Sequence record: LR756500.1 | Length of the DNA stretch: 64,000 nt | Strand: one strand, 5' to 3' | Part shown: piece after piece, positions 24,501 through 62,753 of the stretch | Position numbering within the stretch: position 1 is the first letter of the stretch | Layout of the letters: the number at the start of each line of letters is the position of its first letter | Notes under the pieces: model-generated | The model's input: the letters and a program-made list of their open reading frames with translations, nothing else | Told to the model about the DNA's origin: nothing | The model's database searches: none | Made by a program: the position numbers and the translations under genes

Positions 24501-25607
24501 TTAAAAATTATTTGTAATATAAGTTACATTATGAGCTTCAATATGTTTAGGTATATCAATACCTCTAAAAAGTTTGTTAATTACTTTTTCAGGGACCATT
24601 TCTTCTCTAGATAAATTTTGATCTAAAACTTTATTGAATGTAGTATTAATATAAATGATATTAATATAAGCATTATATAATGTAAATAAAGATATTAAAC
24701 TTTCTCGTGTTAATTTAGAAGTATTTGTTGCATTCCATATAAATGATTTACCTTCTCTTAAATATCCTTTAGCAATTTCTTTAGCTGCTTGTATTACATG
24801 ACCTTGTGGCTTATCAGGCTTTATTTTTAATTTAATTCTTATTTCATCTAAACTTATAACAGGTATATCTTTTAAATGAGTTTTAATATAAGTATCTTTA
24901 CCACTTCCAGGTAAGCCACTCATTAAATAAACTTTAGATTTAGTATCATTAAATGCTTCATCTGTATGATAATAAGTTTTTTTAACAATATAATTAAATT
25001 TAGTATATTCATTTTTAAATTGATATGAATTATAATAACATCCTAATTCTTCTGCATATAATCCAAACCAATTAATCTTTTCAATCATACTTTCAGTATC
25101 TGATGCAATTCTTCCCAAAGTATCATATATAGCAAGTTTATGTAATAAAAACAAATTACAATCTAAACTCATTTTAATTATATCATACTCTTGATCTTTA
25201 TTTGTTTTATCTATAATCCAAGGTGGTTCACCGTGATAAAGAATAAGATTTGCTATTTGTAATTTATCTTCAAATGTTATTATATTCTTCTGTTCAATTT
25301 TATCTAAAAGTTCTAGCGCAATATGATAACCTATTCTACTATGTCCGTGACTTCTAATATGTCCATTTTCTTCTTTACTACAATATGGTTTTCCGATATC
25401 ATGTAAAGTTATTGCATATCTTAATATTTTTTGTTGTTGTTCTGTAAATAATATAGATTCTTTTTCAAATTCATCTAAAACCATTCTGACATGCGTTAAT
25501 ACATCACCCTCCGCATGATATTCTTTATCTTGTTCGCAATGTTTCATATCATGAAAGTATGGTATAATTTCAGGTAATATTTTTTGTATATAAGTTAAAA
25601 AATCCAT
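24501..25607 (-). CDS. HD-domain plus P-loop kinase (polynucleotide kinase-like, RNA end healing)
   Basis: YHAEGDVLTH...LHDIGK and GLPGSGKDT...SLDEIR...WNATN. Confidence 0.85.
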   Translation of the reverse strand: MDFLTYIQKILPEIIPYFHDMKHCEQDKEYHAEGDVLTHVRMVLDEFEKESILFTEQQQKILRYAITLHDIGKPYCSKEENGHIRSHGHSRIGYHIALELLDKIEQKNIITFEDKLQIANLILYHGEPPWIIDKTNKDQEYDIIKMSLDCNLFLLHKLAIYDTLGRIASDTESMIEKINWFGLYAEELGCYYNSYQFKNEYTKFNYIVKKTYYHTDEAFNDTKSKVYLMSGLPGSGKDTYIKTHLKDIPVISLDEIRIKLKIKPDKPQGHVIQAAKEIAKGYLREGKSFIWNATNTSKLTRESLISLFTLYNAYINIIYINTTFNKVLDQNLSREEMVPEKVINKLFRGIDIPKHIEAHNVTYITNNF

Positions 25608-25609
25608 TT

Positions 25610-26704
25610 TTATTTTTTCATTTCATTATATAAAGTTGCTCTTTTCCAGTTTTTTGTCCAATGTTCATCTGTTTGGACATGACCTTTTCTAACCCATTTA
25701 AATATAGAATTATAAAACATATCATTTGGAAATTCATCAGCAATTCTTGTTACTATTCCTTCTTTAGGAGATATAAAAAATTCTGAATCACTTAATGTAG
25801 AATATGTTGAAACTAATTCTTCTATTTTATTATAAATAAAAGTTTCATTTACATTAAAATTTTTATCGCTTTTAAATAAAACAGGTACAGTTGGTAAATC
25901 TAACATATTTGCATAAAATTCAACTTCTTCCCATGATAACCAAAAGTCTCTACTCATATCTCTTATACCAAAAACATAAAAATGACTATCTAATTTAGAA
26001 TATTCTATGCTATGAATTCCATACATATTTTCACCACATATTTCTAATTCTCCTAAGTCATGTCTAATCATATTCCATAATGGAGATAACCAACTATCCC
26101 ATCCATTTTGTGATGGTGATATTCTTGATCTACCAAATACTCCAAAACGAGAAATACTTGTATTAGAACCATCTAATTTTTCAGTCATAATAATTTCACC
26201 TTTGCATACTTTATTTATATTTTTAGCAATTCTATCATCACTTGTTGTTCCTGGCGAATTTAAAACATGATATGTTCTTGGATATTTTTCAACAATCATA
26301 TTTCTATCTTTTTCAAATAAATGTAAAACATTTCCTTGCTTTAACATTTTCTGAACATTTTCTTGATTAAAATGATAACCTTTTAATCGTTTACCATTTT
26401 TTAAAATTGGATTACCCCATTTATCATAATCTTTAACAAACTCATTTAATGATAAATTATGAGGATATATTTGTATTAAATTTGCCTTTTCTCTTAATTC
26501 TGAAGTTGATATAATTGTTGTTTCAGCATCTATATGATGTTTAGCGCATAATGATACACCATTATTTAAATAATATCCACCATCTAAAAATAAATTTCTA
26601 TCTATTATATGATGTGCATCGATTGTAGGTTCATTACATATAACGCATTTATAATTATCTCGTTTAAATACTTGAGTCTTAAATTCTTCTCTACTTAATA
26701 ACAT
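25610..26704 (-). CDS. HNH domain fused to an RNA ligase
   Basis: RDNYKCVIC...DAHHI...LCAKHH then KYPRTYH...EKLDGSN...CGENM...KEGIV...KWVR. Confidence 0.85.
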   Translation of the reverse strand: MLLSREEFKTQVFKRDNYKCVICNEPTIDAHHIIDRNLFLDGGYYLNNGVSLCAKHHIDAETTIISTSELREKANLIQIYPHNLSLNEFVKDYDKWGNPILKNGKRLKGYHFNQENVQKMLKQGNVLHLFEKDRNMIVEKYPRTYHVLNSPGTTSDDRIAKNINKVCKGEIIMTEKLDGSNTSISRFGVFGRSRISPSQNGWDSWLSPLWNMIRHDLGELEICGENMYGIHSIEYSKLDSHFYVFGIRDMSRDFWLSWEEVEFYANMLDLPTVPVLFKSDKNFNVNETFIYNKIEELVSTYSTLSDSEFFISPKEGIVTRIADEFPNDMFYNSIFKWVRKGHVQTDEHWTKNWKRATLYNEMKK

Positions 26705-34849: not shown

Positions 34850-36010
34850 TTAATGATTATATTTTTCATTTTTTATTTCATTTTCAATATTACAGCGATA
34901 TTGATTTTCATATTTATCTCTAAAATATGATGTATAAAATATTTCTTTTTTATCTAAAATATTTAATAAAAATTCCTTTCTTTTCTTAAAGAAATCTTTT
35001 TCATTATAATTAGAAAATTCACTAATTATATCAAGTACATTTTCATTATATCTATATTTTTCTCCCCATTGTGCTAAATCAATATCACATAATATTTTAC
35101 CTAAAGCATTTGTTACTTCCTCTGAATGTTTAGTTGCTAATATTGCATCATAAATTCCATCAACTATTCTTTCTTCTAAAGAAGGCTTAATATTTAACAA
35201 TATAGAATTTACTGCTTCGTGTGCACTTAATGTTTCATTTTCTTTATACTCTGCTACATCAGTAGAATAAATATAATCATGATAAAAAATACTAATTTCT
35301 AAAATAGCTTTATCAATTTCATCTATAGTATTAGATTCACAATAATTATCTAAATAATTTATCATATCATATATATGATAAATGTCGTGAAAATGTCTAT
35401 TTTCATTTGTATATACTTTAAATATTTCATCAAAATTTGTTTCAGCTATTTCAATATTAAATATATTAGTTAATTTTTTATAAGCATCAATATATCTTTC
35501 CTTTAGAAACTTATAATATAATAAATAAAATTCAGTTAAATTAGGTACAAATTTACCAACTTCTTTTCTCCATCCTGTTATTCCAATTAATCCTCTAACC
35601 ATAGAAGAACTCAAATGTTCATATTCTCTTGGAGTAATAAAATAAATAGTATCTAACGTATTATTGTCAATTAAATCTTTATTAATATAATTTAATGTTC
35701 TTTCTTCTAAAAAATCTTTTTCATTTCTTAGACCTCTTACTAAATATTTAATATCTTTTTCAACTGCATATTTAGCAATAAATCCATCTTTAAATTCTCT
35801 AACATGAACATTATTTATATTAGATGTTTTTAAAAAGTCAATAACTATTTTTTTACGTATTTCTAAGCTAAAAAAATATTTATCTTTTTTAGATGGATTT
35901 TCAGCTATTAATACATAAAGATTATCGAATATCTCTGCAGCTTTTTCTATAACCCAACAATGACCACGAGTTAAAATATCAAAACTTCCTGCATATATAG
36001 CATTTTTCAT
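34850..36010 (-). CDS. coaD: phosphopantetheine adenylyltransferase fused to an HD-like phosphohydrolase
   Basis: YAGSFDILTRGH, VRGLRNEKDF..E and SSSMVR, then RHFHDIYHI...FYHDYIY...CDID. Confidence 0.85.
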   Translation of the reverse strand: MKNAIYAGSFDILTRGHCWVIEKAAEIFDNLYVLIAENPSKKDKYFFSLEIRKKIVIDFLKTSNINNVHVREFKDGFIAKYAVEKDIKYLVRGLRNEKDFLEERTLNYINKDLIDNNTLDTIYFITPREYEHLSSSMVRGLIGITGWRKEVGKFVPNLTEFYLLYYKFLKERYIDAYKKLTNIFNIEIAETNFDEIFKVYTNENRHFHDIYHIYDMINYLDNYCESNTIDEIDKAILEISIFYHDYIYSTDVAEYKENETLSAHEAVNSILLNIKPSLEERIVDGIYDAILATKHSEEVTNALGKILCDIDLAQWGEKYRYNENVLDIISEFSNYNEKDFFKKRKEFLLNILDKKEIFYTSYFRDKYENQYRCNIENEIKNEKYNH

Positions 36011-36012
36011 TA

Positions 36013-36519
36013 TTATTTATTATTTTTAATGATTTCAGTAATTTTGAATATTTTATCTTTATCAGAAGAACCTGAATTAATAGCTTTAACAATATTATAT
36101 GATTTAAACATATCTTCATCATATTTGGATAAACCTAATTTTTTCATAAAATCTATTTTTTCTTGTAAATTAGTAACTTCAGCTTCAATATCTAATATTT
36201 TTGTTAATTTAGATTTAATTTGATCTTCAAACAGTTGAATATGATTTTTAGATGAAGATAACAAATCAAAAACAGATTTATCACTTAATACTAAATATCC
36301 TACTAATACATTACTAATAATTTTATTAAATGTTTTTTCATCATTAGGAAAAAGTTCAATTTCATAAAATCCACTATAACCATTATGTTTATAACTTTTA
36401 ATTCTTATATATTTTATACCATATACCCTATTAAAATTCATAATTTCTTGTGTTATCCATATAGGAGCTTTAACTGATAATTTTACAAAATCTCCATCTT
36501 TAAATTTTCTAGTTGACAT
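36013..36519 (-). CDS. hypothetical protein
   Basis: 168-aa ORF with a coiled-coil C-half. Confidence 0.7.
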   Translation of the reverse strand: MSTRKFKDGDFVKLSVKAPIWITQEIMNFNRVYGIKYIRIKSYKHNGYSGFYEIELFPNDEKTFNKIISNVLVGYLVLSDKSVFDLLSSSKNHIQLFEDQIKSKLTKILDIEAEVTNLQEKIDFMKKLGLSKYDEDMFKSYNIVKAINSGSSDKDKIFKITEIIKNNK

Positions 36520-36879: not shown

Positions 36880-37989
36880 TTATTTAACTATTAATTTTTT
36901 TCTAAATATTGCATTTTTATTAGTTGCAATTACAATATATTGTCCAATAGGTATTCTTTCATGTGGATCTATAGCTTCAATTATATCATTCGTAAATCCT
37001 GTAATAATTATTTTTGAATATAATTCTTGTCCTAATTCATTAATAACAACCACCATAATTTCTTCAGCACTAGAATGACTTATATGTATAAATAATGATT
37101 CATCTACATCTTTAGGATTAGGATAAATATCAAAAGAAAAAGGTTGTTCATATATTATGTATTTAGTATCAAAATATTTATAAAATCCATTTTTATCTAC
37201 TTGTTTTAATCTATAATAATTTATTCCATTTGTTGGATTTATATCATATATTGAATATTCAATATTTTCATTAGAATTGCCCACAGCAAAAACAATATCA
37301 AGCATATTAAAATTAATAAGATTATTTGATTTTTCTATAATAAATAAATCTGTATTAATTTCAGATGATGTAGCCCAATCTATTTTAACTTCATTATCTA
37401 TTAAACTTACTTCAAAATTTAATAATTCAATTGGTAAAGTATTTACTATTATGCTATCAGTAATAACAACAGAACCTGAAATAGTAATAGGATCAATTCC
37501 CATTATACAACAACTACCTGATACAGAACTTGCAATTATTGTTCCATTACCATTTATGTCTGCTCCTACTCCATTATTAATATTACCAGTTACAAATAAA
37601 TTTCCATTAATTGTTATATTATTTGAATTATTGTTATTTATTAAATCATTTAAAATAATAAGAGTTGCACCTTCATCTATTATAACTATACATCCATTAT
37701 TAAATTGAATATTTTGTACAACTAATATACCACAACCTATTATATGTAATGAACATTGAGATCCAATTATTAATGTTCCTCTACATTCTGCATTTATTGA
37801 ATCTGTTCCAGATATAGTTATTGTATCTTTAGAGGGATCAGGTATTCCATGATCCCATGTTCCAGTAATACACCAATTTCCATCCTTTATAGATGTTGTA
37901 TGTTTAGCAATGGCTTTAAGATAATTATCTTGACTTGATACACTTAAACTTAATAAACAAAATAATAAAGTTAAAATTAATTTTATCAT
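36880..37989 (-). CDS. secreted protein with a T9SS type-A C-terminal sorting domain
   Basis: Sec signal peptide; LPIELLNF...W.TSSE.N...YYRLKQVD domain; IYPNP...GQ...G.Y...KKLIVK. Confidence 0.85.
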   Translation of the reverse strand: MIKLILTLLFCLLSLSVSSQDNYLKAIAKHTTSIKDGNWCITGTWDHGIPDPSKDTITISGTDSINAECRGTLIIGSQCSLHIIGCGILVVQNIQFNNGCIVIIDEGATLIILNDLINNNNSNNITINGNLFVTGNINNGVGADINGNGTIIASSVSGSCCIMGIDPITISGSVVITDSIIVNTLPIELLNFEVSLIDNEVKIDWATSSEINTDLFIIEKSNNLINFNMLDIVFAVGNSNENIEYSIYDINPTNGINYYRLKQVDKNGFYKYFDTKYIIYEQPFSFDIYPNPKDVDESLFIHISHSSAEEIMVVVINELGQELYSKIIITGFTNDIIEAIDPHERIPIGQYIVIATNKNAIFRKKLIVK

Positions 37990-38865: not shown

Positions 38866-39939
38866 TTATAATAAGTTTGTTGCCATTTCTGCCAATGGAC
38901 TTCTTTCTCCTTTTAATAAATTAATATGAGTAAACATAGGTTGACCCTTTAATTTGTGAATTAAATAAGTTAATCCGTTAGAGTGTTTATCTAAATAAGG
39001 AGAATCAATTTGAAATATATCTCCAGTAAAAACAAATTTTGCTCCCTGACCAGCTCTAGTTATAATAGTTTTAACTTCATGAGGAGTTAAATTTTGAGCT
39101 TCATCAATAATAAAATAAGTATTAGCTAAACTACGTCCTCGTATATATGCTAAAGGTGTTATAATTAATTTATCATTTTTTTGTAATTCCTCTATTTGTC
39201 GTAGTTCATTACTGCCCTTACTAAAATTGTATTTTATAACACCTAAATTATCAAATAATGGTTGCATATAAGGAGCAATTTTTTCATTAACATCACCTGG
39301 TAAAAATCCTATGTCTCTATTAGCTAATGGAACAATAGGTCTTGCTAACATTATTGATGCATATTTATTAGATTGCTCTAAAGCAGCGGTAAGTGCCAGA
39401 AGGGTTTTACCAGTATTATGTGAACTTATTCCATCTCCACCCCAATATCTATGATTTTCATGCAATACTTCAAAATCATATACCTCACTATCCTTTAATT
39501 TTTTTATTTCTTTAATTTCACTCCATCCATCTTTAGTATAAATAGCATCACCTATATTTAAATTTTCAGTTTTTTCCCAGCCTAATCTTTTTTCTAATAA
39601 ATGATCAAATGAACATTTTATAGAAAGCTTATTTGATGTTAGTATTTTAAAACATTCTCTTTTTGATTTTTTATAAAAATCACCAATCTCTTGATATCCA
39701 TCAGGCGTATCAATTAATATCATATTAGAAATATTAGAATTATAAAGGGTTTCAATTTCTATAATTTCACTATAATTACGTATATGTTCATTAAAAAATG
39801 CATTTATTTCTTTTTCATAATATTTACTTATCTCATTAATAGATATATCATCAGTAATATTTAAAACTTTTCGAATTTCAATGACATTATAATATTCTAA
39901 TAATTCTTCTATTTTTTCTTCTATTTTTAAATTCATCAT
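38866..39939 (-). CDS. phoH: split-intein C-fragment (175 aa) fused to the PhoH C-terminal half
   Basis: Intein blocks [15 protein letters not shown] and SSHN (N at 39415-17), followed by TGKTLLAL...RGRSL...IIDEAQN...GDIFQID. Confidence 0.9.
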
Positions 39940-41179
39940 GTATAATTTTTGTTATTTTTTTAATTGTATTAAATATATTATCACTATCCCAAATAATTAA
40001 TACATTTTTATTATTATTAATAGCAATATTTTGTTTATAAATATCTTTTTTAAAAATCACTTCTGCATCTTCTTTTGAATATAAATGTCTCCAATTATTC
40101 CATTCATTTATTGATAATTTTTCTTTATTAGGATGAATATGACTTCCATTATATTCAATAATTATATCTAAATCTTTTATATAAAAATCGTAAAAATATA
40201 TTTTTTTAGTTTCTTGATCATATATAAAATATTCATTCTCTTTATACATATATTCAAACTCTATTCCATAATCTTTCTTACATATTTCTATTAACTTATC
40301 AAAAAATATAATAGATGATTTAGAATAAAATTTATTTTTCCAAGCTTTAATTTTTTTGTTTAAAATTTCTATTTTTTCTTCATCGGATTTATTATTTAAT
40401 GTTTGCTGCCATTTATCTTGTCTTTTTTTCCATACTAAATATCCTTCTTGTTTTCCATACTTTTCTATACATTTTTCTAAACTAAATGTACTTTGTCTTT
40501 CTGATAAAGCTTTATATGCTTCTAATAAACTTAAACCTTTATTTAAAAAATGTTGTAAAGTAGTAGGATAAATATATGTTCTCTCTCCACTAACTTTATA
40601 TCTTTTTATAGCTTCAGCTCCTTTACTTTGTTTATTATAAATTTTTTCTTTAGCTTCTTCATCAGTATATAAGTTATTAGTTATAGGATTAATTTTATTT
40701 AAATAAAATTCCCATCTATTACTATTACCAAACGATTTTTTAATTTCATCATAATTTTTTTTATTTTTAGTTGTTACATATTTTTTATTGTATATTTCTT
40801 TTTGTACTTTTATAGCTTCATATATTGATATATTTCGTTTTTTAGATATATTTTTAATAGAAATATTTCCTTGACGATTTTTAATCAATAGTTTAGTTTC
40901 AAGTTCAGACCAACCTCTATTTAAATAATATTCATTAGAAGTATTTGAATTTGGACCATATCCTAATAAAGTATTTGTTATTTTAGTTTTTAAATTAATA
41001 TTATTAAATATTTCTAAATATAAATCATATTTTATTTTTAAATTTTCTGTATTATAAGTATTAATGTGTTTTATATTTTGTTTTATAATATCACAATATT
41101 TATTAAAATTTAGTGGTTCATTTAATAATATAAAATTTCTTTTTTCTTTAATTTTTTTAAATAATAAATTTAAACTCAT
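39887..41179 (-). mobile_element. free-standing Vsr-like/PD-(D/E)XK homing endonuclease between the phoH halves
   Basis: YFYDFYIKDLDIIIEYNGSHIHP...VLIIWD C-terminal nuclease; helical YY..RGW N-terminal region. Confidence 0.75.
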
Positions 41180-41225
41180 AATATATTTTTATTTTATATA
41201 TTATGAGTTTAAATTTATTATCCAG

Positions 41226-42128
41226 CTATTCCTGTTGATTTTTACTATTAATTTTATTTTTTGATTTCATTTTATATATTTTAATTTTTTCATCTGGATA
41301 TAAACATCCTGCTTTTCCAGTTAATACTATTAAAGGACAATCATTATTTAATAAAGCATGCATTGCAAAAGATTGTTCTGCATTTTTAGGTTCAATTCCA
41401 AATATTTTTTTCTTATCTATTTTAATAAGTTTATCTGTATTTTTATCGTAATATGCTAATGCACTAGATGTATCACATTTTAAAATAAAATATTCGTTAG
41501 ACTGCGGATAATCACTTTCAGTAAAACCTAAATCAACAGGACTTAATCCTTTAGGTGTAACATATAATTTATCTATATTATCAGCAGTCAATTGTTTTAA
41601 AATATCTGCTTGTTTATCAACTATATTTGTATCTTCAATTTTTCCGGCTTTATAATCTTCTGCATCTATACCTAATGATAAAGCTTTCATTCTTAGATTA
41701 ATATCTTGACTTACTAGTATTACCTTTTTAGGTATATAATTTTTGTTTATTAATCCATTTGAATCATATTCAGCATATTGTTCTTTTAATTTACTAGCAA
41801 TAGCAAGTATTCTATGATCTGCGGTTTTCTCTGGAAAAGATGTTGACAAATCATCATTAAAAGGAGCTCCTTTAACTATAAATAATTTTCCTAATCTTTC
41901 TCCTAAAACTATTCCTTCTTTAAAGTTTCCAAGCTCAGCTAATTTATTAAGTTCACGTACAAATTCTCTGGCATGAAAATTTATAGTTTCTGAACCCTTT
42001 TTAAATTTATCTAATTCTTCTAAAACTACTATAGGTATAACTACATCGTTATCTCTAAAATTATATATACATTTATAATCATATAATAGAACATTTGTAT
42101 CTAACACTAAAATTTTATTCATTTTCAA
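41226..42128 (-). CDS. phoH: PIN-PhoH N-terminal half fused to a short split-intein N-fragment (26 aa)
   Basis: VLDTNV...VLEELD...ADHRIL...SQDINLR PIN domain; ends VLTGKAG-CLYPDEKIKI (Cys at 41304-06). Confidence 0.9.
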   Translation of the reverse strand: MKMNKILVLDTNVLLYDYKCIYNFRDNDVVIPIVVLEELDKFKKGSETINFHAREFVRELNKLAELGNFKEGIVLGERLGKLFIVKGAPFNDDLSTSFPEKTADHRILAIASKLKEQYAEYDSNGLINKNYIPKKVILVSQDINLRMKALSLGIDAEDYKAGKIEDTNIVDKQADILKQLTADNIDKLYVTPKGLSPVDLGFTESDYPQSNEYFILKCDTSSALAYYDKNTDKLIKIDKKKIFGIEPKNAEQSFAMHALLNNDCPLIVLTGKAGCLYPDEKIKIYKMKSKNKINSKNQQE

Positions 42129-44895: not shown

Positions 44896-46083
44896 TTACA
44901 TTAATGATAAATCTCTTTTACATAATTCTATTTCACTATCTAATCCTAAATGTTTTATTGGATTATCTGATAATTTAACTGTTCCAATATATTGTTTACC
45001 AAATGGCTTTGCAAATGTCATTTTAATGACCATATTTAATGGTCTAAATCCTACGTCATTTGTAAGATTAGTGCCTATACCAAATGATGCTTTAATTTTA
45101 CCATTACAATATTCATTTATATCTATTGCTAACTGGGGATCTAATGAATCAGAAAAAACTATAGTTTTAGTTTTAGGATCAATTCCTAAACTATTATAAT
45201 GATTAATTACTTTATTTGCAAATTCAAAAGGATCACCACTATCGTGACGAACGCCATCAAACAATTTTGCTAAAGACAAATCAAAGCTATTGAAAAATGA
45301 ATCAGTAGTAAAAGTATCTGAAAGAGCAATTCCTAAATCTCCTCTATATACATTTACCCAATTATCCATTGCTAATTTATTAGCCATTCTATAACCATAT
45401 TTAACTCCATGAAACATAAACCATTCATGAGCATGAGTTCCAATTATTTTTAAATTATATTTTAATCCAAAATAAACATTTGAAGTTCCAATAAACCATT
45501 TATGTAAATTATTTTCTAAAAAATCTTTTATAACTTTTTCTTGATTATCAAAAGAAGCTCTTCTTCTTGTTCCAAAATCAACAACTTTAATATTATTAAA
45601 ATTAAATAATTTAGATTTAGTCAAATTAATTTCAGTTCTTTCATCTTCAGATTTCATTATTTGACCAGTCATTTTAAAAAATAATTCAGAAATCACAGCC
45701 ATTAATGGAACTTCCCATAATATAGTTTCATGCCATGGACCTTCAATAACAACTTGTAAATCTCCATTTGTTTGAATTATACCTACCTGACTAGGATCAA
45801 ATCTATATCCATTTAAATAAGTAATATAAGTGGGATCTAAATAACTACCGCATTTTTCTGTTAACTTAATTCTTTCTTCGTTAGTTAATTTTAATTCTTT
45901 AAAACTATCTACTTGTTTTCTAAGTTCTGATGCAAATCCTTCTGGAAATTTATCTTCTTTTCTTCTATTAATAAACTCATATTTAACATCAGCTCTAGGA
46001 AATAATTTTATAACTGCCTGTTGTTGAGTAAATTTATAAAGATCAGAATCTAAAATTGAATTAATAATTCTTGGATATTTCAT
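44896..46083 (-). CDS. pncB: nicotinate phosphoribosyltransferase
   Basis: LDSDLYKFT, DFGTRRR, GTSNV, GTHAHEW, RHDSGDP and FGIGT. Confidence 0.92.
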   Translation of the reverse strand: MKYPRIINSILDSDLYKFTQQQAVIKLFPRADVKYEFINRRKEDKFPEGFASELRKQVDSFKELKLTNEERIKLTEKCGSYLDPTYITYLNGYRFDPSQVGIIQTNGDLQVVIEGPWHETILWEVPLMAVISELFFKMTGQIMKSEDERTEINLTKSKLFNFNNIKVVDFGTRRRASFDNQEKVIKDFLENNLHKWFIGTSNVYFGLKYNLKIIGTHAHEWFMFHGVKYGYRMANKLAMDNWVNVYRGDLGIALSDTFTTDSFFNSFDLSLAKLFDGVRHDSGDPFEFANKVINHYNSLGIDPKTKTIVFSDSLDPQLAIDINEYCNGKIKASFGIGTNLTNDVGFRPLNMVIKMTFAKPFGKQYIGTVKLSDNPIKHLGLDSEIELCKRDLSLM

Positions 46084-52986: not shown

Positions 52987-54015
52987 TTAAATAATAACTT
53001 TGTAACCTGCATCTGCTAAATATCCTATAGCATGTTTAACAATACCTTGTTTATTTTTATCTGATAAAGTTATTTGAATTCCTGTAATTTTTTTAACTTC
53101 TTCTTTAATTTTAACTGCACTATAACCAGTTAAATCTAAAGTTTTATCAATAACAGTTTTATCAATAACAGTTTTATTAACTACCTTATTTAAATCTTTA
53201 TCATTATTAGATAAATCTTTATCTTTAGGTATCATAGCAAGAATTTCATTTCTTTCTGATGATGATACATTTCCATCTTTATCTTTTTTAGTATCAACTA
53301 CAATATTAAGAACTTTATATCTGCATACTCTCATTTTTTGATTTTTATAATCAGTAGGAACTGCTACTACATCTTTAGGATTAACAACAACTTCAATTAA
53401 AGTATCTCCTGAAAAAGTTGATGCATATTCCCAAGCTGCAACATGCAATCCTGAACTACAAGTATTATTTCTATTTGCATCAACTTTTTCTCTTTGCATT
53501 TCAACAACTAAACCAACATTATTTTTAAGTGTTTTAGTATGAGAGTCCATTAAATTTGTACCTACTTTAGTAACTTTTTTATAAGCTATAAAATTACCTT
53601 CTGGTGTAATAGGATGATGATTAGATTCTAAGAAACTATATAAATCTTTTCTTGATTCTAAAGATGGATTAAGTCTTAAATTTTCCCAGAATTTTATTAA
53701 ATAAATAAAATCTAATCCTTCATTTATAAAATCTAATAATCTTTTAGCTAAAATATGAGGAACTGGTTCCTTTTTATCATCTTTCATCCAAAGCAATCCA
53801 TCATCTGTTACTTCAAAATAAGTATTCGCATATCTTACAATTTTACTTTTAGGACTTAATATTTCTTTAACGGATTCATAATCTTTATCCTTTAAAAATC
53901 CTTTAACTGATTTAAATTTTGCTGTATCTGAAGAACTTATATTATAAGTTCTTCCTTCAAAATTAATTACTATATTATTATTAGTAATTAAGTGACTTAA
54001 TGTTTCATTTTTCAT
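52987..54015 (-). CDS. rIIB: rIIB-like protein
   Basis: NPSLES...LYSFL...ITPEGNFIAYK, CSSGLH, NPKDVVAVP.DY...KMRVCRY. Confidence 0.9.
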   Translation of the reverse strand: MKNETLSHLITNNNIVINFEGRTYNISSSDTAKFKSVKGFLKDKDYESVKEILSPKSKIVRYANTYFEVTDDGLLWMKDDKKEPVPHILAKRLLDFINEGLDFIYLIKFWENLRLNPSLESRKDLYSFLESNHHPITPEGNFIAYKKVTKVGTNLMDSHTKTLKNNVGLVVEMQREKVDANRNNTCSSGLHVAAWEYASTFSGDTLIEVVVNPKDVVAVPTDYKNQKMRVCRYKVLNIVVDTKKDKDGNVSSSERNEILAMIPKDKDLSNNDKDLNKVVNKTVIDKTVIDKTLDLTGYSAVKIKEEVKKITGIQITLSDKNKQGIVKHAIGYLADAGYKVII

Positions 54016-54016
54016 T

Positions 54017-56374
54017 TTACGTTATTTTTAATGTTAAACTTTCTATTTTTTCTTTGTTATCTTTATTAACTAATTTAATGTATTCATTTATTTCATTTAT
54101 ATAATTTTCAATTCTATATGTTTGAAATAATGGAATTAATTTATAAGTTTTATTAATATTTTTAATCTTATCGATAGATATTTCAATATTTTTATCGAAT
54201 TTATAAGATAAATTTGATATAAAATAATTAACAACATATTTATTTAGAGAATTATAAATTTTAGAATTAGATTTTTTTAATGCTAAAATTTTAGTTGTAA
54301 TGTCGGTAATAACTTTTCCAATTTCTGTATCTCCAAAATTTAATTTATCATAATGTTGACTTACTATTAAATCCTCATATAACTCAAATAAATAAGAATT
54401 TTCTAAATATTCATTTATTAAATCGACATTTTTTTTATCTTTAATTAATTCTTCAGCTGAAGTTATAATTGAATTCCCTATTTTTTTATTTTCTATTTTT
54501 GTTATATTTTTTTTATTTATAGCTAATAAATTAAACTGCTTATAATTATGCAATATTTTTAATTTTAAATGTAATTCTGCATTTAATTTAAAATCTGATA
54601 ATTTATCTACAGCTACATAATAAGTATCTTTATCTGCTAAAAATTGGTAATTCCATTTTGCATCAAATAAATTAGTTGTTTTGTTATATGTAAAATCTAT
54701 GCTTTTCCATTTATCATCAGTATCACATCTATATTTAGAAAAATCAAAAACAACATACTTAGCTGGAAAATGAGTAATTATAGGAAGTTTTATTCCATTC
54801 TCATCTTTTGCTAGAGTTATTTTTAATGGAATAACGTCTTTATAATTAATTACATTAAATATTTTTTTAATATTATTTAATTCTATAAGTTTTTCATTTT
54901 CAAATTCAATAGTTTTAGCTTTAATTGCTATTTCATCTTTAATCATCCATTTAGGTGGCTTATAAAATAATTCCTTAATTAATATAAATCCATTTTCATT
55001 ATTTTTTATAATAGATAAATCTCTTTTAATATTTCTTTTTGATGAATCTAATAAATAACATGGTAAAGAATTCCATATTCTTGCATCATAAAATCCAACT
55101 TCATTTAATGAATTTTTATTTTCAATATTTTCAACTTTAATATTTTTATCTTTTCTAAATATTTGTGTAGATGTAAATTTATTGTATTTAAAACTTACTT
55201 CTAATTTTTGATTATTATAGAAAAAATCTGTAAACAATTTATTTTGTTGTAACCAAGTTTTCATATAATGTAAAAAATTAGAATCTTTATTTTCACTAAA
55301 TAAATCTACTCCTTGACCATTAATAATTGAACTATAAATTGCACATGCATGAATATAATTAGTAGCTTTTTTAATTTCTGTATTAAATTCCTCTTTAAAA
55401 ATATTTTTAATATATGTAAATCTATCTCTTAAAATTTTATTAGTTTTATCAGTATATTGCAAATTTTCTCTGTTAACTGAAATGTCTAATACACCATTAT
55501 CAAAATATAATATTAAAGTATTTTGAATATTATTATTATAGTGTTCTGGTATATTTTTATATTCAGCTAATTCATTATCATAAGGGTATGGTATACCGTC
55601 TATTGATATGATAGTAGTTTTTTCAAAAGTTTGTTTATTATTTCCAATAGCATTTGAATTTGAATTAACTTGAGCAATATTGTATTTATTACTTTTGGAA
55701 ATATCATTATAATATGACAATTTTGGAATTATTATGTTAAATCCTGAATATTTAGGCTGACATTCCCATAATGATGTATATTCAATACATTTTTTTTCGA
55801 AGGTATTTCTATCATTTGGATTTATAGGAATAATAATAGATGTACCATTTAATTCTTGGGTTTCTTCTTGATTTAAGAGAATTATTTTTCCTCTTTTAGA
55901 TTCATCTATATATGCAGTATAATAATATTTAATTTTATCTACTACGGTTATTACATTAAAAATATCTGTATATGAAAACGGAGTTTTAGCACCTAAACCA
56001 AATCCTCCTGTCATATAATTTGAATATCTTTTTGTTGATGCTGCATATTTACAAAATACGTTTCCCATTCTATCTGGGGAGATACCGGGTCCATTATCTT
56101 TGAACTCAATAGATAATGATGAATTATTTATTAATTCTTGTCCTTTATTATCTCTAATAATTATTTCAATTGGAATATCATTGTGTCCAACTTCTCTATT
56201 TGCATCTCTAGCATTTGATGCTATTTCTCTACAAATAGAATCTATTGGTTTTTTATAAATTTTTGATCGTAACATATCAAAAATTATACCTGTATCTTCT
56301 ACATTTACTGAAAAATCATATTCTTTAATTTGCCCTTCTGCTTCTGTATGAATTGTTGATTGTGGTAATTTCAT
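54017..56374 (-). CDS. rIIA: rIIA-like protein (GHKL ATPase N-terminus)
   Basis: REIASNARDA, DNGPGIS, STK...GGFGLGAK.PFSY; adjacent to rIIB. Confidence 0.9.
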   Translation of the reverse strand: MKLPQSTIHTEAEGQIKEYDFSVNVEDTGIIFDMLRSKIYKKPIDSICREIASNARDANREVGHNDIPIEIIIRDNKGQELINNSSLSIEFKDNGPGISPDRMGNVFCKYAASTKRYSNYMTGGFGLGAKTPFSYTDIFNVITVVDKIKYYYTAYIDESKRGKIILLNQEETQELNGTSIIIPINPNDRNTFEKKCIEYTSLWECQPKYSGFNIIIPKLSYYNDISKSNKYNIAQVNSNSNAIGNNKQTFEKTTIISIDGIPYPYDNELAEYKNIPEHYNNNIQNTLILYFDNGVLDISVNRENLQYTDKTNKILRDRFTYIKNIFKEEFNTEIKKATNYIHACAIYSSIINGQGVDLFSENKDSNFLHYMKTWLQQNKLFTDFFYNNQKLEVSFKYNKFTSTQIFRKDKNIKVENIENKNSLNEVGFYDARIWNSLPCYLLDSSKRNIKRDLSIIKNNENGFILIKELFYKPPKWMIKDEIAIKAKTIEFENEKLIELNNIKKIFNVINYKDVIPLKITLAKDENGIKLPIITHFPAKYVVFDFSKYRCDTDDKWKSIDFTYNKTTNLFDAKWNYQFLADKDTYYVAVDKLSDFKLNAELHLKLKILHNYKQFNLLAINKKNITKIENKKIGNSIITSAEELIKDKKNVDLINEYLENSYLFELYEDLIVSQHYDKLNFGDTEIGKVITDITTKILALKKSNSKIYNSLNKYVVNYFISNLSYKFDKNIEISIDKIKNINKTYKLIPLFQTYRIENYINEINEYIKLVNKDNKEKIESLTLKIT

Positions 56375-56436: not shown

Positions 56437-56868
56437 TTACATTTCCGTAAAACATTTTTTTCTTAATTCTGTAATAGTATAACCTTCTGGTATATCTAAT
56501 CTTTTTTCATATAAACCTCGTTTAATTCTTCTTATAAATCCTGTTGCTGTTAGCATATTTAAATATGTGTCCTGTGTAGAATTATTTCTTTCCATATGCT
56601 TTAATATTTCATTTCTACATATCTTTTCACCAACAGTTTTAGAATTAAATAATATTTTGATATCTTTCCAAACATGTAATTTTTTATTTCTAATATAAGA
56701 AATTATATTACTACCACTTATAGTATAATCATTTTGTGTTATTAACGATCCAGTAACATAATTTCCAAGGCATATAGGAGTTGTAGTATTATTAATTGTA
56801 ACGCTAGCCGAGCTAATACCAGTTGTACCTGTTGTAATAAAAGGAATATTTGTATTTACAAAATTCAT
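56437..56868 (-). CDS. hypothetical protein with a wHTH-like C-terminus
   Basis: TYLNML..TGFIRRIKRGLY. Confidence 0.65.
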   Translation of the reverse strand: MNFVNTNIPFITTGTTGISSASVTINNTTTPICLGNYVTGSLITQNDYTISGSNIISYIRNKKLHVWKDIKILFNSKTVGEKICRNEILKHMERNNSTQDTYLNMLTATGFIRRIKRGLYEKRLDIPEGYTITELRKKCFTEM

Positions 56869-56873
56869 ATGAA

Positions 56874-57131
56874 TTAATGTAATGGATGAGATTTAGCATA
56901 TCTATAATTCCAACGTTTTTTTAAGTCTTCAGAATATTCTGAATCATTTTGATACTTATTTACTACTTCATATAAAGCAGGATAAGCGGATTCTAATAAA
57001 TTTCTATTTATTGAATCTGCAACAGTCATTGCTTCTATTAAATGAGTGTAAAATCTTCCCGTTAATTTTAATTGCCACATGCAGAATTTTTCTTCTTCTT
57101 CTGTTATAATAGCATCTACAAAATCTTTCAT
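56874..57131 (-). CDS. hypothetical protein
   Basis: 85-aa ORF. Confidence 0.7.
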   Translation of the reverse strand: MKDFVDAIITEEEEKFCMWQLKLTGRFYTHLIEAMTVADSINRNLLESAYPALYEVVNKYQNDSEYSEDLKKRWNYRYAKSHPLH

Positions 57132-57658
57132 TATTTATTTATTTTAATTGATTTAAAAAAAAGTAACATTTTATTACCTTCCATCTTTGGACTTCCTTCT
57201 GGTTCACCAAGACCATTTAAGTCTTGTATTAATTTAGTTAATAATTTAGTTCCTAATTCTTTATGAGTAATCATTCTTCCTTTAAAAAAAACAAAGGTTT
57301 TTATTCTATTACCTTCGTTTAAAAACTTTTTAGCATGATTTAATTTAAAATTATAATCATGCTCATCAGTCATAGGAGTATATCTTATTTCTTTTGTTTT
57401 TACTTGAGTTTGATTTTTTTCTTGATCTTTTTTCTTTTTCTTTTGTAAATATAAAAACTTTTTATAATCTATTACTTTAACAACTGGAGGATTAGTATTA
57501 GGTGAAATTTCAACTAAATCTAAATCTAAATCATCAGCTTCTTGTAATGCTTCTTCTATGCTACATACTCTTGATTCTATTTCATCTCCAACAATTCTTA
57601 CTGTTTTTGCTTTTATTTGATTATTTATACGAAAATTTAAATTATCATTCTTAGACAT
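57131..57658 (-). CDS. infC: translation initiation factor IF-3
   Basis: RINNQI...VRIV...DLVEISPN..PPVVKVIDY.KF...KEIR...DEHD..FK...F..GN. Confidence 0.95.
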   Translation of the reverse strand: MSKNDNLNFRINNQIKAKTVRIVGDEIESRVCSIEEALQEADDLDLDLVEISPNTNPPVVKVIDYKKFLYLQKKKKKDQEKNQTQVKTKEIRYTPMTDEHDYNFKLNHAKKFLNEGNRIKTFVFFKGRMITHKELGTKLLTKLIQDLNGLGEPEGSPKMEGNKMLLFFKSIKINK

Positions 57659-61415: not shown

Positions 61416-61428
61416 ATGTTTATATTTG

Positions 61429-61500
61429 AGCGAGATATCAGGATTGAACTGACGGCCCTTGGTTTGGAAAACCAATGCTCTACCACTGAGCTAATCTCGC
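61429..61500 (-). tRNA. trnG: tRNA-Gly (TCC), no encoded CCA
   Basis: Cloverleaf: GCGAGAT/ATCTCGC acceptor, TTGGT-TTTCCAA-ACCAA anticodon arm, TTCAATC T-loop. Confidence 0.9.
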
Positions 61501-61507
61501 ATTTTAA

Positions 61508-62089
61508 TTAACTAATTAAAACATCATATAATAAATTAATTTGATATTCTAAATCTTCTTTTAATCCATTATTATAAATAACATAATCAGAATTTTTAAC
61601 TCTATAAATATCTGTAATTTGTTGTTTATTAATTCTTTTAATAACATCTTCTCTTGTACAATTATTTCTCTTTATTACTCTTTCTATTCTTTTTTCTATT
61701 GGTGAAACAACAGATATCATTTTATTATAAGAATCTTCATCATTTTTTTCGAATATAATTGCATTTTCGATAATTACAAATGGCTTTTTTTGTATTTTAC
61801 ACCAATAATCTATTTCTAATTCTACATAAGGATGAATTATTCTTTCAATTTTATAAAGTTTATCGTTATCATTAAAAATAATAGAAGCTACTTTTTCTCT
61901 ATTTAAACTTTTATCTGGGAAATAAACATCACCTAATAAATCAATAACTTTTTCTTTAATAGCATCATTTAAATATGCATCTCTTGCAATTTGATCTGCA
62001 TTTAATACTGGAACACCTAATTTTGAAAATAAAAAAGCTACAGTACTTTTACCTGCACCTATACCACCTGTTAAACCTATTTTTGCCAT
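61508..62089 (-). CDS. coaE: dephospho-CoA kinase
   Basis: IGLTGGIGAGKS, LNADQIAR, IIHPYV and RVIKRN; ATG at 62089. Confidence 0.92.
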   Translation of the reverse strand: MAKIGLTGGIGAGKSTVAFLFSKLGVPVLNADQIARDAYLNDAIKEKVIDLLGDVYFPDKSLNREKVASIIFNDNDKLYKIERIIHPYVELEIDYWCKIQKKPFVIIENAIIFEKNDEDSYNKMISVVSPIEKRIERVIKRNNCTREDVIKRINKQQITDIYRVKNSDYVIYNNGLKEDLEYQINLLYDVLIS

Positions 62090-62111
62090 ATTAAATCTAT
62101 TTAAAAATTTG

Positions 62112-62185
62112 AGCCTCCAGTAGGATTCGAACCCACGGCCCTCTCGGTACAAACGAGATGCTCCGACCAACTGAGCTATAGAGGC
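62112..62185 (-). tRNA. trnT: tRNA-Thr (TGT), no encoded CCA
   Basis: GCCTCTA/TGGAGGC acceptor, TCTCG-TTTGTAC-CGAGA anticodon arm, GGTTCGAATCC. Confidence 0.92.
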
Positions 62186-62187
62186 AT

Positions 62188-62225
62188 TGGAGCGGGCTCG
62201 GCGATTCAACCGAGGATCATCCCGC
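62188..62225 (-). ncRNA. tRNA-Gly-like minihelix (acceptor and T-arm only, with CCA)
   Basis: GCGGGATGATCCTCGGTTGAATCGCCGAGCCCGCTCCA. Confidence 0.55.
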
Positions 62226-62237
62226 ATATTTTATTAG

Positions 62238-62309
62238 AGCGAGATATCAGAATTAAACTGACGACCTGAACATTGGCAATGTTCCGCTCTATCACTGAGC
62301 TAATCTCGC
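62238..62309 (-). tRNA. trnG: tRNA-Gly (GCC) with atypical T-loop TTTAATT, no CCA
   Basis: GCGAGAT/ATCTCGC acceptor, GAACA-TTGCCAA-TGTTC anticodon arm. Confidence 0.85.
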
Positions 62310-62447
62310 ATTGTGTAGTTTTTGTAATATCCCCTGAACTACTAACAGTGCTAACCTATGATTTAGAGAACAGTTGCGCATTATTAAGAGGCAGTTCATA
62401 TCTTCGATCCATTATAGTGCACCATAAGAGGGCTAATTTCTAAATTG

Positions 62448-62519
62448 TTGTCTCTCACTGAGTCGAACAGTGATTTTTAGATCCAAATTCTAATATAATA
62501 ACCATTATATCAAGAGACA
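62448..62519 (-). tRNA. trnQ: tRNA-Gln (TTG), AT-rich, no CCA
   Basis: TGTCTCT/AGAGACA acceptor, TTAGA-ATTTGGA-TCTAA anticodon arm, CACTG-TTCGACT-CAGTG T-arm. Confidence 0.8.
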
Positions 62520-62529
62520 ATTTAAAATG

Positions 62530-62580
62530 CGTAATAAAATAAAACAACGTTTCAACATGTTTCAATTTTATTTTATTACG
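62530..62580. repeat. 15-bp perfect inverted repeat between tRNAs
   Basis: cgtaataaaataaaa (62530-44) / ttttattttattacg (62566-80). Confidence 0.85.
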
Positions 62581-62673
62581 ACTATATAACAATAAGCAGC
62601 TGACTACTAATTTCAGCATGTCTCCGTTTAAATTATCACTAACCCTAGGTGTAGAGAACTTATTATTACATTG

Positions 62674-62753
62674 TGGAATCGGAGGGATTCGAACCCCCAA
62701 GTCTTTCGAGCCTGATCTACAGTCAGGTAGGCCACCAATTGCCCAACAATTCC
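62674..62753 (-). tRNA. trnY: tRNA-Tyr (GTA), no CCA
   Basis: GGAATTG/CGATTCC acceptor, CCTGA-CTGTAGA-TCAGG anticodon arm, long variable arm, GGTTCGAATCC. Confidence 0.92.

What the first reader, a model, noticed from the sequence alone, without database searches (positions are those of the whole stretch)
36880..37989. Phage gene for a Type IX secretion system cargo
Seen: a Sec signal peptide, a Gly/Asn/Cys-rich beta-solenoid-like region, the LPIELLNF...YYRLKQVD domain and a type-A CTD (IYPNP...KKLIVK). Established: this CTD routes proteins through the Bacteroidota T9SS to the cell surface. Inference: the phage uses host T9SS to display or secrete its own protein (receptor masking, adhesion, or jamming of the translocon or gliding motility).
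Basis: partly seen in the sequence, partly recalled or inferred. Interest (0 to 1): 0.65.

Follow-up and report, generated by a model that had tools for sequence, protein, structure and literature searches.

The report
Huge-phage gene for T9SS-secreted protein
A 460-kb groundwater phage carries an intact gene for a small adhesin-like protein with every sequence and fold mark of cargo for the Bacteroidota type IX secretion system; this is real, but phage-borne T9SS cargo was already reported in 2019-2020 and what the protein does is still unknown.

Summary
Window 36880-37989 (- strand) is one 369-aa ORF with four parts:
- a Sec/SPI signal peptide, cut VSS|Q, with Gln at +1 (the Bacteroidetes Q-rule);
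- a roughly 155-aa right-handed beta-helix, closest to the TibA autotransporter adhesin passenger (Z 11.6);
- an FN3-like "LPIELL...YYRLKQVD" module;
- a C-terminal type-A T9SS sorting domain (TIGR04183 32.7 bits against a cutoff of 23; seven-strand fold matching the PorU and mirolase CTDs, Z about 10).

The window is LR756500.1, a 462-kb "uncultured phage" from groundwater.

Several features of the genome point to a Bacteroidota host. Five of six SPI signal peptides follow the Q-rule. There is no Shine-Dalgarno signal. Nearly all homologues lie in Bacteroidota.

The gene has the phage's own base composition (GC3 5%). Its closest relatives (42-46% identity) sit on two other phage-like contigs and form a well-supported clade with it. 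It therefore looks like a retained phage gene rather than a recent passenger.

It is the only T9SS-tagged gene in this genome. CTD-tagged genes were also found in all five other huge-phage genomes I tested, but those five were a biased sample.

Phage-encoded T9SS cargo has been described before (de Jonge 2019; Bellas 2020), so this is a new member of a known kind. Expression, secretion and purpose (surface shielding or adhesion is my best guess) remain untested.

The parts
36880..37989 (-). Complete CDS of the 369-aa pre-protein, including the stop codon at 36880-36882
   Evidence: ORF list. An identical protein is on record on 3 contigs, including the 462-kb phage record. Gene GC is 23.3% and GC3 4.9%, against 24.2% for the window.
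37933..37989 (-). Sec / signal peptidase I signal peptide, residues 1-19, cut VSS|Q so that Gln is residue +1 (Bacteroidetes Q-rule)
   Evidence: Hydropathy and sequence inspection. Q-rule literature: PMC5837995. Five of six SPI-type signal peptides in the phage genome have Q at +1.
37447..37911 (-). Cargo domain, residues 27-181: a short right-handed parallel beta-helix rich in Asn, Gly and Ile, with 7 Cys. It has an N-cap motif G-x-W...W..G.P...D.I.I and a Cys-Cys pair (160-161) conserved in the phage clade.
   Evidence: AF2 model. VIA-align: TibA 4q1q_B Z 11.6, Hap 3syj_A Z 9.3. Atlas structural look-alikes are beta-helices of CHU_C-, PEP-CTERM- and Por_Secre_tail-tagged surface proteins. 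Alignment A1.
37138..37440 (-). FN3-like beta-sandwich module, residues 184-284 (LPIELL...YYRLKQVD). It is a spacer or stalk that commonly precedes type-A CTDs.
   Evidence: VIA-align Z 10-10.8 to FN3 domains. Atlas TM 0.91-0.95 to the same module in PF18962 proteins with many different N-domains. More than 587 Bacteroidota genome loci carry it. It has no Pfam or NCBIfam model.
36883..37128 (-). T9SS type-A C-terminal sorting domain, residues 288-369. It has seven beta-strands, IYPNP in strand 1, Gly320 in the beta3-beta4 loop, G349-x-Y351, and the C-terminus KKLIVK.
   Evidence: TIGR04183 32.7 bits against cutoff 23. The family profile hits the CTDs 8glk_D and 8glj_D at E 1.8e-8 and 1.3e-5. 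VIA-align: PorU CTD 6za2_B Z 10.2 (23% identity), mirolase CTD 8qb1_A Z 9.9. The model has seven strands. Motif definitions: PMC11285876.
37990..38280 (-). 291-bp AT-rich intergenic region upstream of the gene. A promoter may lie here, but none was identified. There is no Shine-Dalgarno sequence before the ATG.
   Evidence: Sequence. The sigma-70 consensus scan found no more sites than shuffled sequence, and no terminator. Genome-wide, SD-like cores are absent.

Best explanation
The gene encodes a secreted protein that a huge (about 460 kb) groundwater phage makes inside its Bacteroidota host and sends out through the host's own export machinery.

Proposed route:
1. The Sec translocon carries it across the inner membrane.
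2. Signal peptidase I cuts after VSS, exposing Gln20. The host glutaminyl cyclase would convert this to pyroglutamate.
3. The protein folds in the periplasm, where the 7 Cys of the N-domain can form disulfides.
4. The 82-residue type-A C-terminal domain is recognised by the T9SS (PorV/SprA translocon), and the protein crosses the outer membrane.
5. The CTD is then removed. The mature protein is either released or tied to the cell surface.

The mature product is a roughly 155-residue right-handed beta-helix held on an FN3-like stalk. This is the build of an adhesin or surface-coat protein, not of an enzyme.

My best guess for its use is that it changes the surface of the infected cell, either by shielding or occupying surface structures so that other phages cannot adsorb, or by altering adhesion, during the long infection cycle of a huge phage.

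Shown here: the domain anatomy, the curated CTD match, the folds, the phage origin, the Bacteroidota signatures, and retention of the gene in a phage lineage. Inferred: expression, actual T9SS dependence, surface attachment, and the purpose.

The confidence of 0.65 is for the whole statement. I put the export route alone at about 0.8 and the surface-remodelling purpose alone at about 0.35.
For: CTD:
- TIGR04183 is above its curated cutoff and covers the full profile at the extreme C-terminus.
- The family profile matches the CTD chains 8glk_D and 8glj_D.
- The model has a seven-strand sandwich, with Z about 10 to the PorU and mirolase CTDs.
- The loop Gly and the C-terminal motif that PMC11285876 reports as functionally relevant are present.

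Signal peptide: Q at +1.

Host phylum:
- Five of six SPI signal peptides in the genome obey the Q-rule, and there are six lipobox proteins.
- SD-like cores occur upstream of 2.8% of genes, against 4.5% background.
- 79 of the 80 best genome loci are Bacteroidota.

Retention in phages:
- GC3 is 4.9%, like the genome.
- The window protein forms a clade (SH-aLRT 99) with P0002 and P0003.
- Both of those sit on phage-like contigs.
- One of these contigs shares 11 of 42 ORFs with this genome at 26-49% identity.

Adhesin-like build:
- TibA and Hap are the top matches for the N-domain.
- No enzyme family hits it.
- Its structural look-alikes are beta-helices of surface-sorted proteins.

Precedent: phage T9SS cargo is already reported. 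Al-Shayeb et al. state that huge phages encode surface proteins that may affect superinfection.
Against: - No RNA data exist for this phage, so expression is unshown.
- No promoter was recognisable.
- Pfam's CTD model misses the domain, and single-sequence phmmer finds no solved CTD, so the tag is divergent.
- CTDs can be species-specific (PMC11285876), so recognition by the unknown host is not guaranteed.
- The host is not identified, and whether it has a T9SS is only inferred from its phylum.
- Nothing computed separates shielding, adhesion, or mere release into the medium.
- The bacterial homologues have no known function and no consistent gene neighbourhood.
Confidence: 0.65

Rival explanations
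1. Passenger gene. This would be a host T9SS-cargo gene picked up by the phage that is not expressed, or of no use to it.
For: Hundreds of bacterial homologues share the same architecture. No expression data exist. It is the only such gene in the genome.
Against: Composition is fully matched to the phage (GC3 4.9%). A 369-codon frame has stayed open in a 23% GC genome. Orthologues at 42-46% identity on two other phage-like contigs form a clade with SH-aLRT 99, with signal peptide and CTD motifs kept in P0002; P0003 begins without a clear signal peptide. That divergence is similar to the other shared phage genes.
Confidence: 0.1
2. Secreted enzyme. The beta-helix would be a small polysaccharide lyase or depolymerase, exported to strip capsule or EPS, for example to ease progeny release or to stop progeny sticking to debris.
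For: Right-handed beta-helices are the fold of pectate lyases and phage depolymerases. Atlas look-alikes include G8/CEMIP beta-helix proteins. The Cryophage T9SS cargos are glycoside hydrolases.
Against: The helix is only about 155 residues. There is no Pfam, NCBIfam or PHROG enzyme hit. The conserved columns of the N-domain are Gly, Asn, Trp and Pro, which are structural, with no conserved acidic or basic cluster. The best structural matches are adhesin passengers.
Confidence: 0.1
3. Virion protein. The two C-terminal Ig-like domains would decorate the capsid or tail, as Ig-like domains do on many phages, and the CTD resemblance would be incidental.
For: Ig/FN3-like domains are common on virions. 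The family profile gives weak hits to the T4 gp5 beta-helix (E 2e-4). In gut phages, T9SS-tagged ORFs were seen next to head genes (PMC6949934).
Against: There is a cleavable signal peptide with the Q-rule. The neighbours are nucleotide-metabolism and regulatory genes (cytidylyltransferase, MazG-like, PhoH, PIN), not structural ones. The same three-part architecture occurs in bacterial chromosomes. The gp5 hits are to a repetitive beta-helix and are probably compositional.
Confidence: 0.05
4. Decoy cargo. The protein's job would be to occupy the T9SS translocon or PorV shuttle, shutting down host secretion and gliding (jamming), rather than to act outside the cell.
For: It carries a bona fide-looking CTD. 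From my own knowledge, phages of Flavobacterium depend on gliding/T9SS surface proteins, and other phages block motility organelles.
Against: A decoy would not need a conserved folded beta-helix plus stalk, yet the N-domain is conserved in the phage clade. Nothing about the CTD looks abnormal for release. No evidence bears on this directly.
Confidence: 0.05

Closest known systems
Phage-encoded T9SS cargo proteins of 'Cryophage' (Bellas et al. 2020, PMC7468147), and T9SS sorting-domain ORFs in gut phage contigs (de Jonge et al. 2019, PMC6949934)
   Same: A phage of a Bacteroidota host carries genes with a type-A T9SS sorting domain, and these are presumed to be exported by the host system.
   Different: The Cryophage cargos are an endoglucanase, a GH39 and a PA14 protein, and they are hypervariable between strains. 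Here the cargo is a small beta-helix with no enzyme signature, present as a single copy in a roughly 460-kb genome. No variation was seen between the two samples that hold it.
Bacterial type-A T9SS cargo (TIGR04183 / PF18962 proteins), for example the CTDs 8glj and 8glk and the P. gingivalis PorU and T. forsythia mirolase CTDs
   Same: Signal peptide, passenger, FN3-like spacer and seven-strand CTD with YPNP, loop Gly, GxY and a basic C-terminus. Bacterial homologues of the whole protein reach 38% identity (P0004).
   Different: This one is encoded by a virus. Its CTD is divergent enough to miss Pfam PF18962. Its composition is extreme (GC3 5%).
Autotransporter adhesin passengers TibA (4q1q) and Hap (3syj)
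   Same: Right-handed parallel beta-helix fold of the cargo domain: Z 11.6 and 9.3.
   Different: There is no beta-barrel translocator and no sequence similarity (about 10% identity). Export would be by T9SS, not type V. The helix is much shorter.
Phage superinfection-exclusion surface proteins, such as T5 Llp and the Cor lipoproteins (from my own knowledge, not tested here)
   Same: A phage-made protein sent to the host envelope that may stop further phage adsorption. Al-Shayeb et al. suggest this role for huge-phage surface proteins in general.
   Different: Those proteins are small lipoproteins with known receptor targets. No target, and no exclusion activity, is known here.

Membership tests
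T9SS type-A cargo (TIGR04183 / PF18962 CTD proteins) | Recognised by a curated model of the type-A sorting domain, above its cutoff | tested here: met
   TIGR04183 gives 32.7 bits against a cutoff of 23, E 5.3e-8, and 37.1 bits in the six-frame genome search. Caveat: Pfam PF18962 gave no hit at E<=1.
T9SS type-A cargo (TIGR04183 / PF18962 CTD proteins) | The domain lies at the extreme C-terminus and covers the whole model | tested here: met
   Residues 288-369 of 369 match profile positions 1-72 of 72.
T9SS type-A cargo (TIGR04183 / PF18962 CTD proteins) | N-terminal Sec signal peptide, since cargo crosses the inner membrane by Sec | tested here: met
   The n/h/c regions and a VSS|Q cut site are seen by inspection and hydropathy. 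No dedicated predictor was available.
T9SS type-A cargo (TIGR04183 / PF18962 CTD proteins) | Compact Ig-like 3+4 beta-sandwich of seven strands | tested here: met
   The AF2 model has seven strands between residues 284 and 368. VIA-align gives Z 10.2 (rmsd 2.2 A) to the PorU CTD and Z 9.9 to the mirolase CTD. The fold definition comes from PMC11285876.
T9SS type-A cargo (TIGR04183 / PF18962 CTD proteins) | Conserved loop beta3-beta4 Gly and conserved C-terminal motif | tested here: met
   G320 is nearly invariant, and G349 and Y351 are conserved, in the 24-sequence alignment. The C-terminus is KKLIVK. Motif relevance is from PMC11285876.
T9SS type-A cargo (TIGR04183 / PF18962 CTD proteins) | The producing cell has a T9SS | tested here: inconclusive
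   The host is not identified. Bacteroidota signatures are strong: Q-rule in 5 of 6 signal peptides, no SD, and homologues almost all in Bacteroidota. The phage itself encodes no PorP/SprF and no type-B CTD.
T9SS type-A cargo (TIGR04183 / PF18962 CTD proteins) | Secretion depends on the T9SS, and the CTD is cleaved on export | not testable with these tools
   This needs expression in wild-type and T9SS-mutant cells.
Phage-encoded T9SS cargo (as in Cryophage) | The gene lies in a bona fide phage genome, not in a host flank | tested here: met
   The gene is at 36.9 kb of the 462-kb record LR756500.1. The IMG/VR copy is rated 96% complete. PHROG hits to rIIA/rIIB, RNA ligase and polymerase lie in the same window, and virion structural proteins lie elsewhere in the genome. 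Composition is uniformly low-GC.
Phage-encoded T9SS cargo (as in Cryophage) | Cargo genes are hypervariable metagenomic islands between strains | tested here: inconclusive
   Only two samples of one study hold the phage. Contigs are identical over the gene.
Autotransporter (type V) adhesins | C-terminal beta-barrel translocator domain | tested here: not met
   The C-terminal half is an FN3-like domain plus a T9SS CTD. The protein is not a member; it shares only the passenger fold.

The most novel reading that the evidence does not exclude
A lineage of huge groundwater phages has kept, over long divergence, a small beta-helix protein that the host T9SS places on the infected cell. There it would act as a surface shield or anti-receptor, blocking adsorption of competing phages or disabling the gliding adhesin track. 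That would be the first superinfection-exclusion or surface-remodelling factor delivered by a type IX secretion system.
Probability: 0.2. Interest if true: 0.65.

Novelty: new member of a known kind. Interest (0 to 1): 0.38.

Why it matters
The gene adds a clean, complete example of a virus using a phylum-specific secretion system to put its own protein outside the infected cell. It comes from a curated 462-kb phage genome. It also shows the trait in the published 634-642 kb phage genomes predicted to infect Bacteroidetes, where the paper describing them does not mention T9SS.

The signal-peptide Q-rule, the lack of Shine-Dalgarno sites and the T9SS tag together give a sequence-only host-phylum call for an uncultured phage.

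If the protein really remodels the host surface, it offers a way to study how huge phages manage superinfection, adhesion or gliding during long infections. As it stands it is an annotation-level result. The concept is already published and the function is unknown.

Tried and rejected
- **Pfam and PHROGs on the protein.** Neither gave a significant hit, and PF18962 was not reported.
- **Single-sequence phmmer of the CTD against the PDB.** Nothing at E<=10. Only profile and fold evidence link it to solved CTDs.
- **T4 gp5 beta-helix hits of the family profile (E 2e-4).** I judged these compositional or repeat similarity, not homology to a tail spike.
- **Promoter and terminator consensus scans.** There were fewer promoter-like sites than in shuffled sequence and no terminator, so these are uninformative in 23% GC DNA. 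No Bacteroidota TAnnTTTG -7 box was seen by eye in the upstream 290 bp.
- **Expression.** No RNA run holds the sequence.
- **Strain variation.** Contigs of the second sample are identical over the gene. Two joints with 21-letter sides in that output were disregarded as unreliable.
- **Other T9SS marks in the phage genome.** A search for a second T9SS-tagged gene, a type-B CTD or PorP/SprF found none.
- **Terminase_6N Pfam in the genome.** No hit. Phage identity rests on other hallmarks.
- **Al-Shayeb et al. main text and the first 200 supplementary files.** No mention of T9SS.
- **Tree of the family.** Beyond the phage trio the branching is unresolved, so no donor lineage can be named.
- **Searches not run.** The large profile search (search of protein representatives) and complex prediction were not used, because no claim here rests on absence of relatives or on a specific binding pair.

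Full report
**What is there**

Window 36880-37989 on the - strand is a single 369-codon ORF that starts at the first ATG after a stop. Its GC content is 23.3% and its GC3 is 4.9%, matching the 24% GC window.

The protein has four parts.

1. **Residues 1-19, signal peptide.** This is a classical signal peptidase I signal: Lys3, a 12-residue uncharged hydrophobic core, then V-S-S followed by Gln20. There is no lipobox and no later membrane segment. Gln at +1 is the 'Bacteroidetes Q-rule' (PMC5837995).
2. **Residues about 27-181, beta-helix.** The region is rich in Ile, Asn and Gly and has seven Cys. In an AlphaFold2 model built on 24 homologues (mean pLDDT 80) it forms a short right-handed beta-helix.
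   - The best match in a Foldseek-independent scan of 48,161 PDB chains is the TibA autotransporter adhesin passenger (4q1q_B, Z 11.6, rmsd 2.3 A, 117 residues).
   - The Hap adhesin is also listed (Z 9.3).
3. **Residues 184-284, FN3-like sandwich.** This is the LPIELL...YYRLKQVD stretch (Z 10-10.8).
4. **Residues 288-369, type-A sorting domain.**
   - It matches the curated NCBIfam model of the T9SS type-A sorting domain end to end (TIGR04183, 32.7 bits against a cutoff of 23, E 5.3e-8).
   - The model has seven strands, and it superposes on the CTDs of PorU (Z 10.2, 23% identity) and mirolase (Z 9.9).
   - A profile of the family also hits the CTD chains 8glk_D and 8glj_D (E 1.8e-8 and 1.3e-5).
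   - YPNP, the beta3-beta4 loop Gly (G320), G349-x-Y351 and a basic-hydrophobic C-terminus are present. The loop Gly and the C-terminus are the motifs that PMC11285876 found relevant for secretion.
   - Pfam's model of the same domain misses it, and single-sequence phmmer finds no solved CTD. The tag is therefore real but divergent.

**It is a phage gene**

- The window is identical to positions 1-64000 of LR756500.1, 'uncultured phage', 462,018 bp.
- The session's own copy is an IMG/VR record of 429 kb rated 96% complete.
- The window holds rIIA/rIIB, T4-type RNA ligase, a polymerase and five tRNAs. Virion structural / tail-spike families occur elsewhere in the genome.
- The immediate neighbours are a cytidylyltransferase, a MazG-like protein, PhoH and a PIN protein. 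The gene therefore sits among metabolic and takeover genes, not in a structural module.
- The DNA is found only in groundwater metagenomes of one study.

**The host is almost certainly a Bacteroidota**

- In the whole phage genome, five of six SPI-type signal peptides have Gln at +1, and six more proteins have lipoboxes.
- Shine-Dalgarno cores are rarer upstream of genes (2.8%) than in random genome positions (4.5%), with an A-rich tract at -13 to -10.
- The FN3-like-plus-CTD module occurs in more than 587 loci of reference genomes. 79 of the best 80 are Bacteroidota.
- The named hits of the protein search are likewise nearly all Bacteroidota.

**It has been kept by phages**

- The closest relatives (42-46% identity) are P0002 and P0003.
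- P0002 lies on a 45-kb contig with ClpP, Apyc1-like, sigma-70-like, PTH2 and NADAR genes. Eleven of its 42 ORFs match this phage at 26-49% identity, within the same genome region.
- P0003 lies on an 8-kb contig of small unknown ORFs with an HNH endonuclease and a T4 RNA ligase.
- The three form a clade with SH-aLRT 99.
- The next relatives are a bacterial protein (P0004, next to dnaA) and another phage-like one (P0008, on a 142-kb contig with YopX and a tRNA synthetase). The rest of the tree is unresolved.
- Together with the fully phage-like codon composition, this argues against a recent, useless capture.

**How common is it?**

- In this genome the gene is unique. There is one TIGR04183 match and one FN3-like module, and there is no type-B CTD and no PorP/SprF.
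- TIGR04183 matches above cutoff were found in all five other huge-phage genomes I searched: LR756502, LR756504 and LR745206 (634-642 kb), plus two IMG/VR genomes of 222 and 288 kb. Al-Shayeb et al. predict that all their genomes over 634 kb replicate in Bacteroidetes.
- Those ORFs all have signal peptides. They include small proteins of about 190 aa, a Reg_prop protein, and a reprolysin-type metalloprotease with PKD domains.
- The five genomes were chosen because they already matched the FN3-like module, so the sample is biased.
- A pattern scan of IMG/VR found 29 viral loci with the module.

**Prior knowledge**

- de Jonge et al. 2019 noted T9SS sorting-domain ORFs in gut phage contigs (PMC6949934).
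- Bellas et al. [quoted passage not shown]
- Al-Shayeb et al. 2020, who published this genome set, say only that huge phages encode membrane or surface proteins that may affect superinfection. T9SS is not mentioned in the text or in the supplementary files I could search.
- Q-rule signal peptides in phage proteins were noted for P. gingivalis phages (PMC10367356).

The concept is therefore known. This is a new, well-formed member in a new setting.

**Mechanism**

The route is Sec export, cleavage at VSS|Q, periplasmic folding, CTD-dependent passage through the T9SS, and CTD removal. It follows from established knowledge of type-A cargo and from the features met here. None of it has been shown for this protein.

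The mature protein is a beta-helix on an FN3-like stalk.
- It has no enzyme-family match.
- The conserved N-domain positions are structural residues: Gly, Asn, Trp and Pro.
- Its structural look-alikes are beta-helices of proteins carrying CHU_C, PEP-CTERM or Por_Secre_tail surface-sorting tags.

I therefore favour a binding or coating role at the cell surface, with superinfection exclusion or altered adhesion as the most plausible pay-off for a slow-replicating huge phage. The secreted-enzyme, virion-decoration, decoy-cargo and dead-passenger readings are less likely, for the reasons given under rival explanations.

**Limits**

- There is no expression data and no recognisable promoter.
- The host is unknown.
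- CTD compatibility can be species-specific.
- The bacterial homologues have no known function and no consistent neighbourhood, so they give no functional lead. One of them lies between PorP/SprF and CHU_C genes.

**Verdict**

- Observation: confirmed.
- Interpretation: supported as to the export route, open as to the purpose.
- Novelty: a new member of a known kind.
- Interest: moderate to low.

Noticed in passing
window 38866-42128 (- strand): A PIN + PhoH (PhoH2-like) ATPase gene is broken inside its Walker-A loop by an intein that is itself split.
- ORF 41226-42128 ends '...TGKAG' followed by a 26-aa piece that starts with Cys.
- ORF 38866-39939 carries the remaining Hint blocks, ending in 'SSHN', and then continues 'TGKT...' into PhoH.
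- A free-standing 430-aa ORF (39887-41179) with a nuclease-like C-terminal motif lies between the two halves.

This looks like a 'fractured gene' with an unusually short N-intein.
   Followed up: partly
IMG/VR loci L009-L036; also L139, L140: 19 of 28 viral ORFs carrying the FN3-like YYRLKQVD module end 48-58 aa after that motif. Their short tail (consensus ..YNxLGQxV....G.......K...) lacks the YPNP strand.
- All have signal peptides, mostly with Q at +1, yet they miss TIGR04183.
- hhalign places the tail on CTD strand 3 after skipping strands 1-2.
- AF2 folds it as three confident strands (pLDDT 90).
- Two further examples also sit on phage-like contigs.
- None of the 78 bacterial loci has a short tail, but that list was ranked by similarity to a full CTD, so the comparison is biased.

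The tail may be a phage-associated minimal or truncated T9SS tag. It remains unexplained.
   Followed up: partly
whole phage genome (G000): e.g. G000:C1:215987-216571, 235791-236189, 56733-57260, 423653-424132: Besides the target, four more predicted SPI-secreted proteins obey the Q-rule, and six proteins have lipoboxes. The phage therefore sends about a dozen proteins to the host envelope. Their functions were not examined.
   Followed up: no
other huge phages: L133 (LR756502), L134 and L138 (LR745206), L135 and L137 (IMG/VR 222 kb), L136 (LR756504): T9SS type-A CTD genes with signal peptides occur in all of these genomes. They include a recurring class of small proteins of about 190 aa, and an 802-aa reprolysin-like M12B metalloprotease with PKD_6 domains.
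   Followed up: partly
window 52987-56374 (- strand): Adjacent rIIB-like (342 aa) and rIIA-like (785 aa) genes give strong PHROG matches, E 4e-60 and 1e-55.
   Followed up: no
window 24501-26704 (- strand): A likely RNA-repair pair. One gene is a polynucleotide-kinase/ATPase-like protein (24501-25607). The other is a T4-type RNA ligase whose N-terminus also matches HNH endonuclease families (25610-26704).
   Followed up: no
window 34850-36010 and 44896-46083 (- strand): A cytidylyltransferase-like (NMNAT-type fold) protein lies directly downstream of the target. A nicotinamide phosphoribosyltransferase-like protein lies 7 kb upstream. Together they may form a phage NAD salvage pair, but this was not examined.
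   Followed up: no
window 61428-62753 (- strand): A cluster of five tRNA genes: Gly-TCC, Thr-TGT, Gly-GCC, Gln-TTG and Tyr-GTA.
   Followed up: no
window 36040: A minority contig in each of two groundwater samples carries a 2-base insertion (GT) here, near the 3' end of ORF 36013-36519. This may be a strain variant or an assembly error.
   Followed up: no
locus L005 (bacterial 459-kb contig): The bacterial homologue P0046 sits between a PorP/SprF gene and large CHU_C (type-B CTD) proteins. This is a hint that some family members work with gliding or adhesin loci. The arrangement was not seen in the other two bacterial contexts.
   Followed up: no
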